From contig NC_068997.1 of assembly GCF_001194135.2 (NCBI RefSeq), forward strand, positions 34,076,151-34,109,652: a stretch of DNA of 33,502 nt, written 5' to 3'. How positions within the stretch are numbered: position 1 is the stretch's first letter; each line of letters starts with the position of its first letter. The position numbers were made by a program, and so were the translations under genes. The notes beneath the pieces are model-generated. The model did not search any database and was not told where the DNA came from. It was given only the letters and a program-made list of their open reading frames with translations. Positions 3,715 through 33,036 of this stretch are shown one piece after another. Origin of the DNA: Octopus bimaculoides. Taxonomy: Eukaryota.

Positions 3715-4373
3715 TACTTCTTACTCTCTTTTACTCTTTTACTTGTTTCAGTCATTTGACTGCGGCCATACTGGAGCACTGCATTTAGTCGAGCAAATCG
3801 ACCCCGGGACTTATTCTTTGTAAGCCTAATACTTATTCTATCGGTCTCTATTGCCGAACCGCTAAGTGACGGGGACATAAACACATCAGCATCGGTTGTC
3901 AAGGAATGCTAGTAGGACAAACACAGACACACAAACACACACGCGCGCACACACACNNNNNNNNNNNNNNNNNNNNNNNNNNNNNNNNNNNNNNNNNNNN
4001 NNNNNNNNNNNNNNNNNNNNNNNNNNNNNNNNNNNNNNNNNNNNNNNNNNNNNNNNNNNNNNNNNNNNNNNNNNNNNNNNNNNNNNNNNNNNNNNNNNNN
4101 NNNNNNNNNNNNNNNNNNNNNNNNNNNNNNNNNNNNNNNNNNNNACACACACACACACACACACATACACACACACACGCACACACACACATCTATACAT
4201 ACATATATACGATGGGCTTCTTTCAGTTTCCGTCTACCAAATCCACTCACAAGGCTTTGGTCGGCCCGAGGCGATAGTAGAAGACCCTTGCTCAAGATGT
4301 CACGCAGTTGGATTGAACCCGGAACCATGTGGTTGGTAAGCAAGCTACTTACCACACAGCCACTCCTGCGCCT
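3715..4373 (-). mobile_element. Full-length tRNA-derived SINE, family A, with an internal (TG/CA)n microsatellite spanning an N gap
   Basis: Minus strand: aggcgcaggagtggctgtgtggt (A box 4351-4362), ggttcaatcc (B box 4310-4319), body to 4200, internal CA repeat and gap (3957-4144), tail body 3910-3740, terminal (AAGAGTAA)n-like repeats near 3715-3745. Confidence 0.85.
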
Positions 4374-6636: not shown

Positions 6637-6797
6637 CTTGGCACCTGTGACGTCGCAACTCATTTCTACAGCTGAGTGACCTGGAGCAATGTGAAATAAA
6701 GTGTCTTGCTCAAGAACACAACACGCAACCTAGTCCGGGATTCGAACTAACAACCTCACGATCGTGAGCTCGATGCTCTAACCACTGAGCCATGCGT
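6637..6797 (-). mobile_element. tRNA-derived SINE, family C head
   Basis: Minus strand: gcatggctcagtggttagagc (A box), gttcgaatcc (B box, 6738-6747), gtgttgtgttcttgagcaagacactttatttcac body. The 3' part is lost in the N gap. Confidence 0.85.
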
Positions 6798-6800
6798 ATG

Positions 6801-9974: not shown

Positions 9975-10680
9975 CTGCACCGTAATTATATCCAAGTACC
10001 TTGACCTAGTGGCTTCCTTCCCCTCACATATTCATCACACATTCACGACACCAATCATGCTCTTCGTTTATTTAACTCTTTCTCTTTCCCTCCTGACCCC
10101 ACTCAACTTCTGTTCACTCTCGCCATCGAATCTCTGTATACGGCGATCCCGCACAATGAAAGTCTTGCGCTAAAACCCTTTCTAGACCTTCGTCCAGACC
10201 CTCAGCCCAACACCTCCACACTTCTTCGTTTGGCTGAATTTGTCCTCTCTCTCAACTTCTCGTTCGCGGGGGAGTTTTACCAACATTCTCGGGAGTGGCC
10301 ATGGGAACGAGAATGGGCCCCAACTATGCAAACCTGTTTTGAGGCCCGATTATTCTCACAGTGCACTGGTCTTACTCCTGAGCTATACAGTTGTTATATA
10401 GACGACTCCACTACAAACACTGATCCACATTCCTACCTCAATTTCTCCTCCTCCCGTCTTACCAAGCTCTCCATCCCCTACTCCCAGTTCATCCGTCTAC
10501 GCCGGTTCTGCAGTGATGACCATGATTTTGAGACCTAGTTTCAACTCATGGTTCACTACTTCACCCTACTTGGATATCTCCTCACTATTATCCAAACTGC
10601 CCTTTCCCGGGCACGATCCGTTGACCGTGCCTCTGGTATTTCCTCACCTCCAACCCTACATCTGCACACCGCCTAACTCA
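9975..10680 (+). pseudogene. Penelope-like element reverse transcriptase remnant
   Basis: Translates across frameshifts as ISKYLD...HDTNHALRLFNSF...LFTL(A)IESLYTAIPHNE...LLRLAEFVLSLNFSF.GEFYQ / GVAMGTRMGPNYANLF (10292 onward) / YIDD (10395-10406), then an internal deletion joining to TDPHSYLNFSSS...SIPYSQFIRLRRFCSDD. These are PLE RT and post-RT motifs. Confidence 0.85.
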
Positions 10681-16399: not shown

Positions 16400-16505
16400 A
16401 GCGCGCGCGCACACACACATACAAAGGTGTACACATATACCTATACACACATACACACACACACACACACACATATATATACACACATATACACACATAT
16501 ACACA

Positions 16506-16549
<44 letters not shown>

Positions 16550-16627
16550 ATATAAATAAAATATATATATACAGGTATATATACATATATGTACATACTA
16601 ACATATATATGTATATATATATATGTG

Positions 16628-16712
<85 letters not shown>
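16400..16712. repeat. Compound (CA)n/(TA)n microsatellite
   Basis: Direct sequence. Confidence 0.9.
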
Positions 16713-16715
<3 letters not shown>

Positions 16716-16718
16716 TAA

Positions 16719-16906
16719 ATGGGTACAGGACGTCACAAAACGTAAACAACACGAAATACGAAAACAAACTTTTGTACGTGAACAACGTGAGAAACAAATA
16801 GAAAACAAGATAAGTTGACTTGTTTTCCATTTGTTTCTCTTGTTCGCATACAAAAGTTTATTTTCGTATTTCGTCTCGTTTACGTTTTGTGACGTCCTGT
16901 ACCCAT
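16719..16906. mobile_element. Palindromic MITE-like element embedded in (TA)n
   Basis: Arms 16719-16809 and 16819-16906 are reverse complements: the outer 29 bp match perfectly, with about 6 mismatches and a 3-nt indel overall. The loop is 9 nt (ataagttga). Confidence 0.8.
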
Positions 16907-16934
16907 ATATGCATATATATATACATATATATAT

Positions 16935-17112
16935 ATCGTGAAGTATATTTGTCACTTAAATGTGGCTAACCCTTAAGGGTGGATGCTACTGTAGTTTGTA
17001 GCCCCCGGAAGACACCTCCTCCAGCTGTCTATTGACATACTTTCTGCGCCCTATCACAGTAGCATCCACCCTTAAGGTTAGCCACATTTAAGTGGCAAAT
17101 ATACTTCACGAT
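16935..17112. mobile_element. Inverted-repeat element with 58/57-bp arms and a 63-bp spacer
   Basis: 16935-16992 (atcgtgaagtatatttgtcacttaaatgtggctaacccttaagggtggatgctactgt) matches the reverse complement of 17056-17112 with 1 mismatch and 1 indel. Confidence 0.8.
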
Positions 17113-17132
17113 GTCGTGCAGCTACTGTTTAT

Positions 17133-17384
17133 ACCTCGCTCAGAGATTTATTTTTGCTTGTTTACACTTTTTCGAGATCAGTGACTTTTCGTCACTGGAA
17201 AAAGGATATATATATTTGCAGTGGGAACCACTTCACATCGACAACCGGTGATTGTCACACGCTGATGACGGGTCAGTACCCAGAAACTCGGGTCCGTGTG
17301 TATCACGTCAAGTTGGAGATGGGAAGGATAGCTTCCCTTTGCAAATACTGATAGGGCACCTCGCTCAGAGATTTATTATTGCTT
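17133..17384 (+). mobile_element. 225-nt ribozyme-bearing unit bounded by 27-bp direct repeats (retrozyme or Penelope pLTR-like)
   Basis: acctcgctcagagatttatttttgctt (17133-17159) and acctcgctcagagatttattattgctt (17358-17384) are 26/27 identical and enclose the hammerhead motif. Confidence 0.65.
17248..17306 (+). ncRNA. Type I minimal hammerhead ribozyme motif
   Basis: Stem I cacacg (17256-61)/cgtgtg (17295-300), extended by gtgat/atcac. Core CTGATGA 17262-68; stem II gggt-cagt-accc; GAAA 17283-86; short stem III ac-tcgg-gt; GTC cleavage triplet 17292-94. The 10.1-11.1 position is a C.A mismatch. Confidence 0.85.
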
Positions 17385-17398
17385 ACATATATATATAT

Positions 17399-17432
17399 AC
17401 TAGCAGCTAAGCCCGGTTTCACCCGGTCAGAG
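17399..17432 (-). mobile_element. Helitron-like 3' terminus
   Basis: Minus strand ends gaccgggtgaaaccgggcttagctgCTAG|T: a GC-rich subterminal hairpin, then CTAG, then T. Confidence 0.5.
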
Positions 17433-17893
17433 AACGACGCGAAGAGAGAAACGAAGACATAAAAAAGAGGAAGAAATTGATATGAAGTGGTGTTTGGGCG
17501 ACGGATCTTGGNNNNNNNNNNNNNNNNNNNNNNNNNNNNNNNNNNNNNNNNNNNNNNNNNNNNNNNNNNNNNNNNNNNNNNNNNNNNNNNNNNNNNNNNN
17601 NNNNNNNNNNNNNNNNNNNNNNNNNNNNNNNNNNNNNNNNNNNNNNNNNNNNNNNNNNNNNNNNNNNNNNNNNNNNNNNNNNNNNNNNNNNNNNNNNNNN
17701 NNNNNNNNNNNNNNNNNNNNNNNNNNNNNNNNNNNNNNNNNNNNNNNNNNNNNNNNNNNNNNNNNNNNNNNNNNNNNNNNNNNNNNNNNNNNNNNNNNNN
17801 NNNNNNNNNNNNNNNNNNNNNNNNNNNNNNNNNNNNNNNNATATATGTATGTATATATGCATATACGTAGATATGTATGTATACACACACATA

Positions 17894-18555: not shown

Positions 18556-19178
18556 TTCAAAGCGTTTAGACCCCGTTGAAAAGCGTTAAGAGTGGAGTAA
18601 AAACCTACAGAATTGGTCCCCAGAGCAGCGGAAGAATGTTATTTTCTCGGACGAGTCATCCTTTACTTTATTTCCGACCACCGTCCGAGTATACGTGTGA
18701 AGACAGCCAAAAGAAGCATTTGACCCAGACTACCTTCTTCCAACTGTTAAGCATGAAGGAGGATCTGTGATGATTTGTGGGGTGGGGCTATATCTTAGAA
18801 ATCCGCCGGCCCAATGGTTTCACTTCATGATAGTGTACCACTTCACACAGCTAAAGTTGTTACTGAATGGTACGAAGAACATTCTAGTGAAATTGAACAT
18901 CTTATCTGGCCACCACAGTCCCCAGATCTCAATATTATTGAACATTTATGGTGCATTTTAGAAAAACAAGTAAGGAGTCGATATCCTCCACCATCATCAC
19001 TACAAGAACTGGAGACTGTTTTAGCTGAAGAATGGGCAAAAATTCCTTTGAAAACAATTCAAACTTTGTACAAGTCCATACCTCGTAGAATTCAAGCTGT
19101 AATTACTGCCAAAGGCAGTCCTACCCCATATTAAAATAAATTTGTTTGAAATTTTAAGGTGTTTCCATTAATTAGTCC
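18556..19178 (+). mobile_element. 5'-truncated Tc1-like transposon, copy B, with DD36E spacing
   Basis: High similarity to 27140-27810. Encodes IFSDESSF and DSVPLHTAK...WPPQSPDLNIIEHLW...RRIQAVITAKGSPTPY*. The right TIR starts at 19157 (aggtgtttccatta) and runs into N gap 19179-19188 and (TA)n. Has an internal deletion of about 100 bp. Confidence 0.92.
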
Positions 19179-19560: not shown

Positions 19561-20790
19561 TATACAGTTGCATTGTAAGGTTACATATCTGAACTTATAT
19601 CAATATCAGTTTCTGTACACAAGTGTAAAGATAGAGAAAGGCATATTTTTGCCTCTTTAGGTAACTCATCTGTTACGTTAGTTTAGAGGCTATGCTGTAG
19701 TAACTTTTAGTTTGCATATTTTAGTGACTCACGGTTGTGTTCCAAAAGTATCATGTAGGAACATGTATAAATATAACTGTCTGAGCATAATCAACACATA
19801 AAGTAAATTTTTGTCTTTTTAGTTAATCAGTTTATTACATTTTTGAAAAGGCTATAATCAAGTTATGGTTGCGTAGCATTCTAATATGGTCTTTCCTTAC
19901 TATAGGCTCCATGGTTACAGTTCATGAGGTTTCCAATTAAGGGGTGGGGTGGGTTTAATCCGAGTTGTTGGGATTATGGTTTGTATAGGTTAGGTGTAGT
20001 TTGCATTGTACTCTGTGAACAGGGGTTTAACTGTATGCATGCATCTAGGCAGTCGATCAGCAAATCTATAATTCGCGCTTTTGTCAACAGTATTGACAGC
20101 GATTTCTCGGAACATAGTAGGCATCTCCGGGATAGAAGTGTTGTGGGAACTCGCTTGTCTAATTATTGATCAGGTCAGGTTGTATTTTACCTTCTCTTCC
20201 TTGAGTCGCCAGATGAAATCGGCCAGTGATTTTGCGTGCCATTTAAGGATTTTTCGAAAGCTGGCGATGTGGTTTCTATATCTGTTTTTGAAAATATCAG
20301 CCAATGCACCGATATATATGTAGGGACCTCCTGTAGTATTTACAGCGCAATTGTACACGACAGTTCGGGTCTTGCATTGGCTACCCAGAGTACATTTCGA
20401 ACGCCCCCTACAATAGCATAGATTGTCAGACTTTGTTTGCGTGTGTACAGCCGGTACCTGTCCGGTCGGTTCCATTCACATTCGTGCTCATGGCTACCCT
20501 ATTATCATTTTTATTGCTTCTATGTGTGTTTATGTTGTTGTTTGAGTTGTGGCTATCATGTGTTGGTTGGTTAGTAAAGTAGTTGCAGTTGTTTTTTCTT
20601 TGTTGGTTAGTGTTATTGTTCGAGTCCTTGTTACTGTGAAGCGTTATGCAGTTGGTATTTGCAATGTCTCTAGGATTGTTATATATGTCTCCGTCAATTT
20701 TTGAGGGCCTATTTTCGATGCTGCCTGCACGCTGCCTTAGTTTTCAGTTAATTCTACGAATGTGGTGCTCCATATTCTATGAGATAGTAA
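19561..20790 (-). pseudogene. Penelope-like element 3' part with a GIY-YIG endonuclease remnant
   Basis: ORF 20475-20170: CYCRGRSKCTLGSQC...VVY...YIG...FKNRYRNHIASF...SLADFIWRLKE...LT, then *SII and frameshifted RCLLC..EK and RCMH downstream, matching the PLE-type GIY-YIG pattern. Confidence 0.8.
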
Positions 20791-26588: not shown

Positions 26589-27819
26589 CAGGGGTCGGAC
26601 AAAATAATGGGAACACCTAGCATCATAGCATCATAATTTTCAAATATCTATAAAACTGTCAAAAGCTTGTTTATTTTTATGATTTTTGATTTATGATTTT
26701 TGCTTCATATGTTTTGTTAAAACTGCTGTTTCTTTTCAGATATAATCAGAAAAAGGTAACTAAAATTCATTAAAATGACAGATATATCGAACTTTCAAAA
26801 AGGTCAAATTGTTGTTGCTCGAATGGCAGGTGCTAGCGTAACGAAAACAGCCGAAATGTTTGGTGTATCAAGAAGTACTACCTCGAAAGTAATGACAGCC
26901 TTTGAGAAGGAGGGAAAAACCACTTTGTCGAAACAAAACTCCGGAAGAAAAGTAAAACTTTCAGATAGGGACCATCGGTCTCTTACGGGAATTGTTAGAA
27001 AATATCCCCAAATTACTGCAGAGCTTAATGACCACCTCGAGAACCCAGTTTCCACAAAAACTGTTCGCCGGGAGCTGCACAAAGCCGGATTTCACGGTGG
27101 GGCTGCAATCAGAAAACCACTACGTTCAAAAATAAACTTTGCAAAGCGTTTAAAGTGGAGTAAAAATCTACAGAATTGGTCCCTAGAGCAGCGGAAGAAT
27201 GTTATTTTCTCGGACAAATCATCGTTTACCTTATTTTCTACCGCCGGCCAAGTATACGTGTGGAGACAGCCAAAAGAAAAATTTGACCCAGACTACCTTC
27301 TTCCAACTGTTAAACATGAAGGAGGATCTGTGATGGTTTGTGGGGGCTATATCTTGAAAATCCGACGGCCTAATGGTTTCACAACATGGCAGAATTAATA
27401 GTGAAGACTATTTAAGCATTTTATCTGATCAAATTCATCCTATGATTGTTGAACTGTTTCCGGGGGGAAACACAATCTTTCAGCTAAATTCTTACTGAAT
27501 GGCACGAGGAACATTCTCGTGAAGTCGAACATCTTATCTGGCCACCACAGTCTCCAGATCTCAATATTATTGAACATTTTATGGTTCATTTTAGAAAAGC
27601 AAGTAAGGAGTCGATATCCTCCACCATCATCACTACAAGAACTGGAGACGGTTTTAGCTGAAGAATGGACAAAAATTCTTTTGGAAACAATTCAAAGTTT
27701 GTATGCGTCTATACCTCGTAGAATTCAAGCTATAATTACTGCCAAAGGCGGTCCTACCCCAACCTAAAATAAATTTGTTTGAAATTTTTAGGTGTTTCCA
27801 TTATTTTGTCCAACCCCTG
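26589..27819 (+). mobile_element. Full-length Tc1-like DNA transposon, copy A, 1231 bp, DD36E (Incomer-like)
   Basis: 31-bp TIRs (caggggtcggacaaaataatgggaacaccta at 26589-26619 vs the reverse complement of 27789-27819, 29/31), TA on both sides (26587-88 and 27820-21), single transposase region. Confidence 0.97.
26775..27767 (+). pseudogene. Disrupted Tc1-family transposase
   Basis: The 207-aa ORF 26775-27398 carries paired-like HTH regions, NSGRK, VIFSDKSSF and PTVKHEGGSVMV, then frameshifts. The DNAPxH motif is deleted at tttcag|ctaaa (about 27483). The C-terminus TEW...WPPQSPDLNIIE...[15 protein letters not shown] is present in other frames. Confidence 0.93.
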
Positions 27820-31804: not shown

Positions 31805-32823
31805 CATACACACACACACATGTGCATATACATCGGCTTAAACGTTGTAAATACTTGAATATGCATGTATCATTGTATGATAAACATGTAAGCGTGTATG
31901 TATGTATGTATGTATGTACGTATAGATAGACAGATAGATAGATAGACAAATAGGTAGACAGATAGATAGAGAGGTTGATAGATAGATAGAGAGGTAGATA
32001 CATTTCTTTTATTAGCAACACAGGGCTCAACGAAGATGGGACAAATACAATGTAGAGCTTTTCTTTTTGTGAGGGGGAAGGAAAAAAAGGTGGGGGGTGT
32101 CGATCAAAAGGGATCGTAGGAAGGAAAAAGGGGGCAGTTCGANNNNNNNNNNNNNNNNNNNNNNNNNNNNNNNNNNNNNNNNNNNNNNNNNNNNNNNNNN
32201 NNNNNNNNNNNNNNNNNNNNNNNNNNNNNNNNNNNNNNNNNNNNNNNNNNNNNNNNNNNNNNNNNNNNNNNNNNNNNNNNNNNNNNNNNNNNNNNNNNNN
32301 NNNNNNNNNNNNNNNNNNNNNNNNNNNNNNNNNNNNNNNNNNNNNNNNNNNNNNNNNNNNNNNNNNNNNNNNNNNNNNNNNNNNNNNNNNNNNNNNNNNN
32401 NNNNNNNNNNNNNNNNNNNNNNNNNNNNNNNNNNNNNNNNNNNNNNNNNNNNNNNNNNNNNNNNNNNNNNNNNNNNNNNNNNNNNNNNNNNNNNNNNNNN
32501 NNNNNNNNNNNNNNNNNNNNNNNNNNNNNNNNNNNNNNNNNNNNNNNNNNNNNNNNNNNNNNNNNNNNNNNNNNNNNNNNNNNNNNNNNNNNNNNNNNNN
32601 NNNNNNNNNNNNNNNNNNNNNNNNNNNNNNNNNNNNNNNNNNNNNNNNNNNNNNNNNNNNNNNNNNNNNNNNNNNNNNNNNNNNNNNNNNNNNNNNNNNN
32701 NNNNNNNNNNNNNNNNNNNNNNNNNNNNNNNNNNNNNNNNNNNNNNNNNNNNNNNNNNNNNNNNNNNNNNNNNNNNNNNNNNNNNNNNNNNNNNNNNNNN
32801 NNNNNNNNNNNNNNNNNNNNNNN

Positions 32824-33036
32824 CCCACACGCGATAGCAGTTGTTCGACGTAAGCCCACAGCTCGGAAATGGTGGGACACTGTATTTCCGAGCTGTGGGC
32901 TTACGTCGAACAACTGCTATCGCGTGTGGGACGAGTCGGTCTATCAGCCGAGTCTATCGTGAATATTGTCGCGTCTCCTTCCTTTAAACGGGAAGGAAGA
33001 GCTATTTTCATCGTACTTGTGGCTATGGCGAAAGAT
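32824..33036 (+). pseudogene. L1/Tx1-clade ORF2 fragment with a head-to-head inverted duplication
   Basis: Plus frame ISELWAYVEQLLSRVGRVGLSAESIVNIVASPSFKREGRAIFIVLVAMAK is homologous to about 29860-29990. 32824-32870 is the exact reverse complement of 32884-32930. Confidence 0.75.

What the first reader, a model, noticed from the sequence alone, without database searches (positions are those of the whole stretch)
17133..17384. 225-nt direct-repeat-bounded unit folding into a rod around the ribozyme: candidate cephalopod retrozyme or circRNA monomer
Seen: 27-bp direct repeats (26/27 identical) exactly 225 nt apart enclose the hammerhead. Five helices nest around the core: 17213-17227/17333-17347 (13/15), 17231-17239/17318-17326 (8/9), 17242-17245/17312-17315, 17248-52/17302-06 and stem I. 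Together they form a rod of about 135 nt with the ribozyme at its tip. A separate 7-bp hairpin lies at 17179-17197. There is no ORF. Established: animal non-LTR retrozymes are non-coding, ribozyme-containing tandem units of a few hundred nt that give structured circular RNAs and probably use Penelope RT. Inference: this is a 1.1-mer copy of such a family, or a solo Penelope pseudo-LTR. Penelope RT and GIY-YIG remnants occur in the same window.
Basis: partly seen in the sequence, partly recalled or inferred. Interest (0 to 1): 0.85.

Follow-up and report, generated by a model that had tools for sequence, protein, structure and literature searches.

The report
Lone hammerhead-ribozyme retroelement copy
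This is a single, probably dead, non-coding insertion that carries one hammerhead self-cleaving ribozyme inside a hairpin-like RNA fold; it matches a known kind of animal mobile element (retrozymes and Penelope-like element ends), and this locus on its own cannot make a circular RNA.

Summary
There is a 27-bp direct repeat (26/27) with 225-bp spacing. All the listed helices exist, and so does a type I hammerhead with cleavage after C17294. The motif, the repeat and the fold all exceed chance: 0 descriptor hits in 300 shuffles, rod z = -3.7, outer arms z = -5.7.

The unit occurs once in the window, with no tandem array and only one ribozyme, so this locus cannot release a 225-nt monomer or circle. 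The ribozyme has a C·A non-pair at the base of helix II and a weak 2-bp helix III that needs a partner copy. Its predicted lowest-energy fold is an inactive one. Rfam does not detect it, but a clean control hammerhead with the same helix III also scores far below Rfam's threshold.

The RT-like and GIY-YIG-like remnants lie 6.6 kb upstream and 2.8 kb downstream, the latter on the opposite strand. Neither adjoins the unit. No related copy could be retrieved from any collection, so copy number, tandem arrays and RNA circles remain untested.

Best reading: a solitary relic of a small element mobilised by a Penelope-like element, inserted beside a (TA)n tract. I could not decide whether it is a 1.12-unit retrozyme copy or a 198-bp truncated Penelope end with a 27-bp target duplication. 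It is a new member of a known kind, of modest interest.

The parts
17133..17159 (+). Direct repeat copy 1 (ACCTCGCTCAGAGATTTATTTTTGCTT). It is either the first 27 nt of a 225-nt unit or the left copy of a 27-bp target-site duplication.
   Evidence: (family D5)
17167..17204 (+). Two-tier hairpin: 7 bp (17167-73/17198-204), a 5-nt one-sided bulge (17174-17178), then 7 bp (17179-85/17191-97) closed by a 5-nt loop.
17213..17347 (+). Rod of 135 nt. Four nested helices enclose hammerhead stem I, with the ribozyme at the closed end.
   Evidence: pair counts; z = -3.7; outer arms z = -5.7
17248..17306 (+). Type I hammerhead ribozyme motif. Stem I is 6 bp, then an internal loop (UGU/U), then 5 bp. CUGAUGA box at 17262-68. 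Helix II is 4 bp with a CAGU loop and a C17269·A17282 non-pair at its base. GAAA at 17283-86. Helix III is 2 bp with a UCGG loop.
   Evidence: sequence; descriptor scan with 1 hit against 0 in 300 shuffles
17294..17295 (+). Predicted self-cleavage site (GUC | C), between C17294 and C17295.
   Evidence: inferred from the hammerhead numbering applied to the sequence; not tested experimentally
17286..17293 (+). Helix III strand ACUCGGGU. It is self-complementary (6 Watson-Crick plus 2 G·U of 8), so two ribozyme copies could form an extended intermolecular helix III.
   Evidence: dimer principle from PMC4209133
17358..17384 (+). Direct repeat copy 2 (one T>A difference). It is either a terminal redundancy ('tail') or the right copy of a target-site duplication.
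17385..17401 (.). AC(AT)n microsatellite immediately 3' of the insertion: an AT-rich integration context.
   Evidence: target preference from PMC11167929 and PMC8557442 (inference)

Best explanation
17133-17384 is a solitary, non-coding DNA copy of a small hammerhead-bearing retroelement RNA of the animal non-LTR retrozyme type, a non-autonomous relative of Penelope-like elements (PLEs). It is most likely a dead relic.

Family-level mechanism (inferred from the literature, not shown here):
- Master loci with two or more tandem units are transcribed.
- Neighbouring hammerheads have helix III too weak to act alone, so they pair through the palindromic ACUCGGGU strand and cut after GUC. This releases unit-length RNA with 5'-OH and 2',3'-cyclic phosphate ends.
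- A tRNA ligase of the RtcB type circularises it into a highly self-paired circle, here a rod plus a hairpin.
- PLE reverse transcriptase and endonuclease, acting in trans, nick AT-rich DNA and copy the RNA.

This locus: reverse transcription of a circular or multimeric template ran for 1.12 units. That gave the 27-bp terminal redundancy, which is comparable in size to the 30-40-bp 'tail' of PLE insertions. Integration was beside a (TA)n tract.

The copy has one ribozyme, a C·A non-pair at the base of helix II and a more stable inactive fold. It therefore cannot release a monomer or a circle by itself.
For: Shown here:
- Direct repeat with 225-bp period.
- Hammerhead motif beyond chance.
- Helix I 6 bp, helix II 4 bp, helix III 2 bp with a palindromic strand. 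This is the 'canonical metazoan type I' architecture that PMC4209133 assigns to tandem-repeat hammerheads. PLE pseudo-LTR min-hammerheads instead have helix II of 7-8 bp, helix I of 4-5 bp and no helix III.
- Highly self-paired RNA.
- Unit of 225 nt and 44.9% GC. Both fall in the published ranges: 150-450 bp and <50% GC in PMC7229834, where the coral retrozyme repeats are 220-240 bp.
- No ORF and no protein homologue.
- No tRNA-like part.
- AT-rich right flank.
- The copy ends lie at 17133 and 17384, not at the cleavage site. The template was therefore not a cleaved linear monomer.

From the literature:
- A mismatch at the base of helix II has a precedent in the axolotl HHR_Amex2 (U·U), which still cleaves, especially as a dimer (PMC7229834).
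- Solo monomers are common in retrozyme families, with a proportion from 0 to 1 (bioRxiv 10.64898/2026.07.22.740005).
- RT-like and GIY-YIG-family remnants in the window are compatible with the presence of PLEs in this genome.
Against: - No second copy of the unit was found anywhere, so no family, tandem array or RNA is demonstrated.
- The 27-bp repeat lies outside every predicted helix. That fits a target duplication at least as well as element sequence.
- The extra nucleotide 5' of helix II is a feature of PLE min-hammerheads (PMC4209133).
- Rfam gives no hammerhead hit. This is weak evidence, because a clean control scores only 18.5 bits.
- The active-like secondary structure (-12.4 kcal/mol) is less stable than an inactive fold (-19.3).
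Confidence: 0.45

Rival explanations
1. A heavily 5'-truncated insertion, or solo pseudo-LTR fragment, of an autonomous Penelope-like element. The insert is 198 bp (17160-17357) and carries the element's hammerhead. It is flanked by a 27-bp target-site duplication produced by staggered GIY-YIG nicks. On this reading there is no 225-nt unit and no circle.
For: - PLE insertions are mostly 5'-truncated and give target duplications of variable length (PMC8557442).
- Most genomic PLE-type hammerheads occur as single motifs attributed to truncated PLEs (PMC4209133).
- The two structured modules, hairpin and rod, fill the 198-bp insert almost exactly, and the 27-mer is unstructured.
- There is an extra nucleotide between A9 and helix II, as in PLE hammerheads (PMC4209133).
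- RT-like and GIY-YIG-family remnants occur in the window.
- Retrozymes and pseudo-LTRs are phylogenetically intermingled in any case (bioRxiv 10.64898/2026.07.22.740005).
Against: - The helix I/II/III sizes are those of canonical tandem-repeat hammerheads, not of PLE min-hammerheads (against PMC4209133).
- No PLE ORF adjoins the unit on either side within the assembled sequence.
- The unit shares no sequence with the neighbourhoods of the RT or GIY-YIG remnants.
Confidence: 0.35
2. A hammerhead-like motif and fold that arose by chance in unique or other repeat-derived DNA, with a small local duplication. It is not a ribozyme-bearing mobile element.
For: - No Rfam hit.
- Single copy in the window.
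- Palindromic DNA is abundant nearby.
- The C·A non-pair in helix II and an inactive lowest-energy fold.
Against: - 0 descriptor hits in 300 shuffles of the whole window on both strands.
- The conserved boxes CUGAUGA, GAAA and GUC (U16.1 and H17) and all three helices are in register, with a palindromic helix III strand identical to that of a bona fide hammerhead in L002.
- The motif sits exactly at the tip of a significantly stable rod and is bounded by a 27-bp repeat whose chance expectation is far below 1.
Confidence: 0.06
3. A ribozyme domesticated by the host, or a structured non-coding RNA gene: for example a self-cleaving element acting in cis on a host transcript, or a small-RNA precursor hairpin.
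For: The fold is stable. Li et al. report retrozyme copies in 3' UTRs (bioRxiv 10.64898/2026.07.22.740005).
Against: - No gene context could be established.
- The surroundings are transposon debris and microsatellites.
- No Rfam family matches the unit.
- The ribozyme carries a helix II defect.
Confidence: 0.04

Closest known systems
Metazoan non-LTR retrozymes (Cervera & de la Peña, NAR 2020, PMC7229834), e.g. the Acropora millepora 220-240-bp and Mytilus ~350-390-bp repeats
   Same: Non-coding unit of a few hundred nt (225), below the <50% GC limit (44.9%). Type I hammerhead with helix I of 6 bp, helix II of 4 bp and a short helix III with a palindromic strand. Highly self-paired predicted RNA. 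Co-occurrence with PLE-like remnants.
   Different: Only 1.12 units and one ribozyme, where the family is defined by tandem repeats with a ribozyme in each unit. No family members, expression or circles shown. C·A non-pair at the base of helix II. Tetraloop on helix II without recognisable loop-loop contact nucleotides; the mussel hammerheads also lack most of these.
Pseudo-LTR 'min-hammerheads' of Penelope-like elements (Cervera & de la Peña 2014, PMC4209133) and truncated PLE insertions
   Same: Solitary occurrence. An extra nucleotide between A9 and helix II. Palindromic 15.2-16.2/loop 3. Possible variable-length target duplication. AT-rich target.
   Different: Helix II is 4 bp rather than 7-8 bp. 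Helix I is 6 bp with a closing stem rather than 4-5 bp. A real helix III is present. No adjoining RT/EN ORF.
The PLE 'tail': an optional 30-40-bp terminal extension caused by two internal reverse-transcription start sites (Frangieh et al. 2024, PMC11167929; Craig et al. 2021, PMC8557442)
   Same: A short terminal extension (27 bp) that repeats the start of the unit. It ends 90 nt downstream of the ribozyme cut site, close to the 85-92 nt I derive from positions given in the text of PMC11167929 for the anole element (cut site 26 bp and main RT start 111-118 bp into the ORF). The flank is AT-rich.
   Different: 27 bp is just under the reported range. The correspondence is by geometry only. No RT start sites or protein-binding element are known for this unit.
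Hammerhead-bearing satellite and SINE-like repeats (newt satellite 2, Schistosoma Sm-alpha; my own knowledge, plus PMC7229834 for the newt)
   Same: Short non-coding repeats with a type I hammerhead that works best as a dimer.
   Different: Those are high-copy families. Sm-alpha has pol III promoter boxes, and no tRNA-like or box A/B part is detectable here (and inspection).

Membership tests
Hammerhead ribozyme, type I | Conserved core CUGANGA ... GAAA ... UH, with helices I, II and III in register and an open helix I | tested here: met
   Core boxes and all three helices are present. 1 hit against 0 in 300 shuffles.
Hammerhead ribozyme, type I | Paired 10.1-11.1 (normally G-C) directly adjoining the core | tested here: not met
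   C17269 opposes A17282. Alternatively, G10.1-C11.1 is offset by one unpaired nucleotide on each side. Precedents exist for a weakened helix II base (PMC7229834) and for a 5' bulge (PMC4209133).
Hammerhead ribozyme, type I | Match to a curated Rfam hammerhead covariance model | tested here: not met
   No hit at gathering score or at E<=10. A clean control with the same helix III reaches only 18.5 bits against a gathering score of 52, so the test has low power.
Hammerhead ribozyme, type I | Site-specific self-cleavage | not testable with these tools
   Needs in vitro transcription of monomeric and dimeric constructs.
Non-LTR retrozyme (active) | Tandem repeat with at least two consecutive units, each carrying a complete hammerhead (bioRxiv 10.64898/2026.07.22.740005) | tested here: not met
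   1.12 units and one hammerhead. TRF finds no array with a period near 225. No second motif in the window.
Non-LTR retrozyme (solo monomer of a family) | >80% identity over >=80% of a family consensus derived from tandem arrays | not testable with these tools
   The host genome is not in any searchable collection. Indirect searches found nothing.
Non-LTR retrozyme | Non-coding, 150-450 bp, GC <50%, no LTR/PBS/PPT (PMC7229834) | tested here: met
   225 bp and 44.9% GC. No ORF and no homologue.
Non-LTR retrozyme | Expressed as unit-length linear and circular RNA joined at the cleavage site | not testable with these tools
   No transcriptome access.
Non-LTR retrozyme | Highly self-paired predicted RNA | tested here: met
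   Rod z = -3.7 and circle z = -2.9. Outer arms z = -5.7.
Penelope-like element pseudo-LTR | Direct continuity with, or repetition on both sides of, an RT(+GIY-YIG) ORF | tested here: not met
   The nearest RT-like remnant is 6.6 kb upstream. The GIY-YIG-family ORF is 2.8 kb downstream on the opposite strand. No shared sequence. A 329-bp assembly gap at 17512-17840 cannot hide an ORF.
Penelope-like element pseudo-LTR | min-hammerhead architecture: helix II 7-8 bp, helix I 4-5 bp, helix III absent or minimal (PMC4209133) | tested here: not met
   Helix II is 4 bp, helix I is 6 bp plus 5 bp, and helix III is 2 bp plus a tetraloop.

The most novel reading that the evidence does not exclude
The unit is a recent offspring of a still-active retrozyme family in this (reportedly cephalopod) genome. 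Such a family would produce abundant ~225-nt rod-shaped circular RNAs processed by a dimeric hammerhead. Its more-than-unit copies would show that PLE-type reverse transcription can run around a small RNA circle, leaving a 27-nt 'tail' signature.
Probability: 0.15. Interest if true: 0.55.

Novelty: new member of a known kind. Interest (0 to 1): 0.3.

Why it matters
Hammerhead-bearing repeats and their circular RNAs are established in cnidarians, bivalves, amphibians and other animals. Their dependence on Penelope-like elements is the current working model. My paper searches found no report of them in cephalopods.

A verified family there would extend the taxonomic range. If more-than-unit copies with a fixed 27-nt overlap are the rule, it would also give a sequence signature for how PLE enzymes initiate reverse transcription on small circular templates. 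As it stands, this single locus is an ordinary transposon relic and cannot itself yield a circle.

Tried and rejected
1. Rfam 15 at gathering score and at E<=10 on 621-nt and 86-nt slices gave no hammerhead hit. I kept the motif because a control hammerhead with identical helix III scores only 18.5 bits and the descriptor and shuffle test is clean.

2. BLASTN of 17100-17511 against the window found only itself, the 27-bp repeat and microsatellite noise. TRF found no array.

3. A six-frame concatenated translation of the unit, searched against 5.8 billion proteins to catch spurious ORFs on repeat copies, found nothing. Exact-product look-ups of two ORFs internal to the unit found nothing.

4. 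A metagenome scan for CTGATGA-N12-16-GAAACTCGGGTC gave 21 loci. Only L002 is a true hammerhead. It is unrelated outside the core and has no flanking direct repeat or tandem array.

5. I tried to reach PLE loci through the RT remnant and got two hits on contigs of <1.5 kb, which were useless for context. The word-indexed search had no hit for the GIY-YIG ORF, and exact look-ups of window ORFs failed.

6. Pfam, NCBIfam and PDB searches run directly on the RT and GIY-YIG remnants gave nothing. GIY-YIG identity rests on homologues found in the representatives library.

7. A tRNA- or SINE-like origin was rejected: ARAGORN found nothing.

8. A paper search combining 'retrozyme' with cephalopod terms was uninformative.

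9. My energy evaluation of the dimeric hammerhead failed, because the intermolecular helix III is a crossing structure in the cofold notation. The dimer argument rests on the self-complementarity count.

Full report
**Observation**

The segment was read directly. A 27-bp direct repeat occupies 17133-17159 and 17358-17384. It is 26/27 identical with start-to-start spacing of 225 bp, and it does not extend on either side.

Between the copies lies a type I hammerhead motif:
- Stem I: CACACG/CGUGUG, 17256-61/17295-300. An internal loop (UGU/U) and a 5-bp closing helix (17248-52/17302-06) follow.
- Core box CUGAUGA at 17262-68.
- Helix II: GGGU/ACCC with a CAGU loop.
- GAAA at 17283-86.
- Helix III: 2 bp with a UCGG loop.
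- GUC, with predicted cleavage after C17294.

One extra 7-bp helix extends the separate hairpin.

**Is it more than chance?**

A hammerhead descriptor required the core boxes, at least 5 bp in stem I, at least 3-4 bp in helix II, at least 2 bp in helix III, and U16.1-H17. It finds exactly this site in the window on both strands and none in 300 dinucleotide-preserving shuffles of the whole window.

The 135-nt rod folds at -50.7 kcal/mol against -36.9 ± 3.7 for shuffles (z = -3.7). The 225-nt circle has z = -2.9. The outer arms without the ribozyme have z = -5.7.

A caveat is that this window is full of palindromic DNA, both MITE-like foldbacks and microsatellites. The rod therefore ranks only about 29th of 1841 windows in raw stability.

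Rfam 15 reports no hammerhead at any threshold. A clean hammerhead with the same GAAAC-UCGG-GUC helix III, found in a metagenome contig (L002), reaches only 18.5 bits against a gathering score of 52. Rfam's silence is therefore weak evidence.

**Quality of the ribozyme**

Three points argue that this copy is weak or inactive by itself.
- C17269 opposes A17282 at the base of helix II, where a G10.1-C11.1 pair normally adjoins the core. CCCAG could derive from CCCGG by CpG decay, but that is inference.
- Helix III has only two pairs. Its strand ACUCGGGU is self-complementary (6 Watson-Crick plus 2 G·U). This is the published hallmark of metazoan hammerheads that act as dimers in tandem repeats (PMC4209133, PMC7229834).
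- The isolated motif prefers an inactive fold, in which the CUGAUGA box pairs with the helix II loop region (-19.3 against -12.4 kcal/mol for the active-like structure).

A mismatched base of helix II has a precedent in the axolotl HHR_Amex2, which still cleaves, best as a dimer (PMC7229834).

**Context**

The unit is unique in the window and is not part of any array. It has no ATG ORF above 46 aa, no protein homologue in any frame and no tRNA-like part.
- Upstream lie two foldback elements, 16689-16936 and 16944-17112.
- Downstream lie an AC(AT)n tract, 110 bp of unrelated sequence, and an assembly gap at 17512-17840.
- An RT-like remnant with SLYT.IPH and YIDD motifs lies at 10005-10535 on the + strand. 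It is 45% identical to a protein with a weak RVT_1 match.
- An ORF at 20173-20475 on the - strand belongs to a large family (1233 homologues), and two tested members hit Pfam GIY-YIG.
- Neither remnant adjoins the unit, and the second is on the opposite strand.
- Tc1/mariner remnants lie at 18701-19131 and 26775-27764.

**What it is**

The anatomy matches the published description of animal non-LTR retrozymes: non-coding units of 150-450 bp, GC below 50% (here 225 bp and 44.9%), a type I hammerhead, and highly self-paired RNA (PMC7229834).

The helix sizes are helix I 6 bp, helix II 4 bp, and helix III 2 bp with a palindromic strand. These are the sizes of the 'canonical' tandem-repeat hammerheads. 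The min-hammerheads of PLE pseudo-LTRs have a long helix II, a short helix I and no helix III (PMC4209133). This tips the balance towards a retrozyme-type element.

The locus nevertheless fails the defining test for an active retrozyme, which is two consecutive units with complete hammerheads (bioRxiv 10.64898/2026.07.22.740005). One ribozyme gives one cut, so no monomer or circle can come from this locus. At best it is a 'solo monomer', a category that the same preprint finds to be common.

**The 27-bp repeat**

Two readings remain open.

(a) Terminal redundancy. Reverse transcription of a circular or multimeric template ran for 1.12 units. This resembles the optional 30-40-bp 'tail' of PLE insertions, which reflects two internal RT start sites (PMC11167929, PMC8557442). 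The copy ends 90 nt downstream of the cut site. From positions given in the text of PMC11167929 for the anole element (cut site 26 bp and main RT start 111-118 bp into the ORF) I derive a distance of 85-92 nt. The flank is AT-rich, as PLE endonucleases prefer. These correspondences are inference.

(b) Target-site duplication. The insert is then 198 bp (17160-17357). The hairpin and rod fill it almost exactly, and the 27-mer takes part in no stable helix. PLEs give variable-length duplications and are mostly 5'-truncated (PMC8557442). Single hammerheads have been attributed to truncated PLEs (PMC4209133).

Without other copies or an empty site I cannot decide. I put (a) at about 0.45 and (b) at about 0.35. 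The recent phylogenetic evidence that retrozymes derive from PLE pseudo-LTRs makes the two readings close relatives in any case.

**Attempts to find relatives**

The source genome is not in any collection I could search by DNA. The following all failed to yield a related unit:
- a six-frame protein search;
- exact-product look-ups;
- a metagenome pattern scan;
- retrieval of PLE loci through the RT and GIY-YIG remnants.

The cephalopod origin is unverified. My paper searches found no report of hammerhead repeats in cephalopods. PLEs are documented in octopus genomes (PMC13282606, PMC8557442).

**Verdict**

The most likely reading is an ordinary, solitary and probably inactive relic of a known kind of hammerhead-bearing, PLE-dependent retroelement. 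It is a new member of a known kind, and interest is modest (0.3). Interest would rise if a genome-wide search showed an active tandem family with expressed circles.

Noticed in passing
window 16944-17112: A near-perfect long hairpin (MITE-like inverted repeat, arms of about 60 nt) lies 20 bp upstream of the unit. It gives sub-threshold Rfam hits to miRNA-precursor models only (MIR904, 41.5 bits against a gathering score of 80).
   Followed up: partly
window 16689-16936: A second foldback element has 97-nt arms that are 93% complementary with a 54-nt spacer. It is embedded in a long (AT)n/(AC)n microsatellite block (16431-16712).
   Followed up: no
window 10005-10535 (+): A decayed reverse-transcriptase remnant carries SLYT.IPH and YIDD motifs and an internal deletion. 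Its best homologue, P0001 (45% identity), has a weak RVT_1 match and PF26215. No hammerhead motif lies near it.
   Followed up: partly
window 20173-20475 (-): An intact-looking 101-aa ORF has a Cys-rich motif followed by a GIY...YIG-like core. It has 1233 homologues in the representatives library, mostly short proteins, and two tested homologues hit Pfam GIY-YIG. No RT-like sequence lies next to it. The N-terminal position of the domain might indicate a Naiad-type PLE remnant, but this was not tested.
   Followed up: partly
window 18701-19131 (+) and 26775-27764 (+): Two Tc1/mariner transposase remnants of one family (DDE_3; HTH_Tnp_Tc3_2). They share the LAEEW..IP...IQ.LY.SIPRRIQA C-terminal stretch. 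Their CTGAAGA...GAAA strings are coding sequence, not ribozymes.
   Followed up: partly
window 32824-32930: A perfect 47-nt inverted repeat with a 13-nt spacer starts exactly at the edge of the N gap 32143-32823. It may be an assembly artefact or a foldback element cut by the gap.
   Followed up: no
window 6736-6800: The string CGGGATTCGAAC... resembles a reverse-complemented tRNA B-box or T-arm, suggesting a tRNA-derived SINE on the - strand. ARAGORN calls no tRNA there.
   Followed up: no
window, 12 N gaps (3957-4144 ... 32143-32823): At least seven of the 12 assembly gaps are bordered by (TA)n, (TG)n or similar microsatellites. Tandem or low-complexity sequence is therefore systematically missing from this assembly, which limits any statement about arrays.
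   Followed up: no
L002 6927-6969 (-): This metagenome contig (Ga0126336_10004877) carries a clean type I hammerhead with the same GAAAC-UCGG-GUC helix III. It is solitary, with no tandem array or flanking direct repeat within 600 bp.
   Followed up: partly
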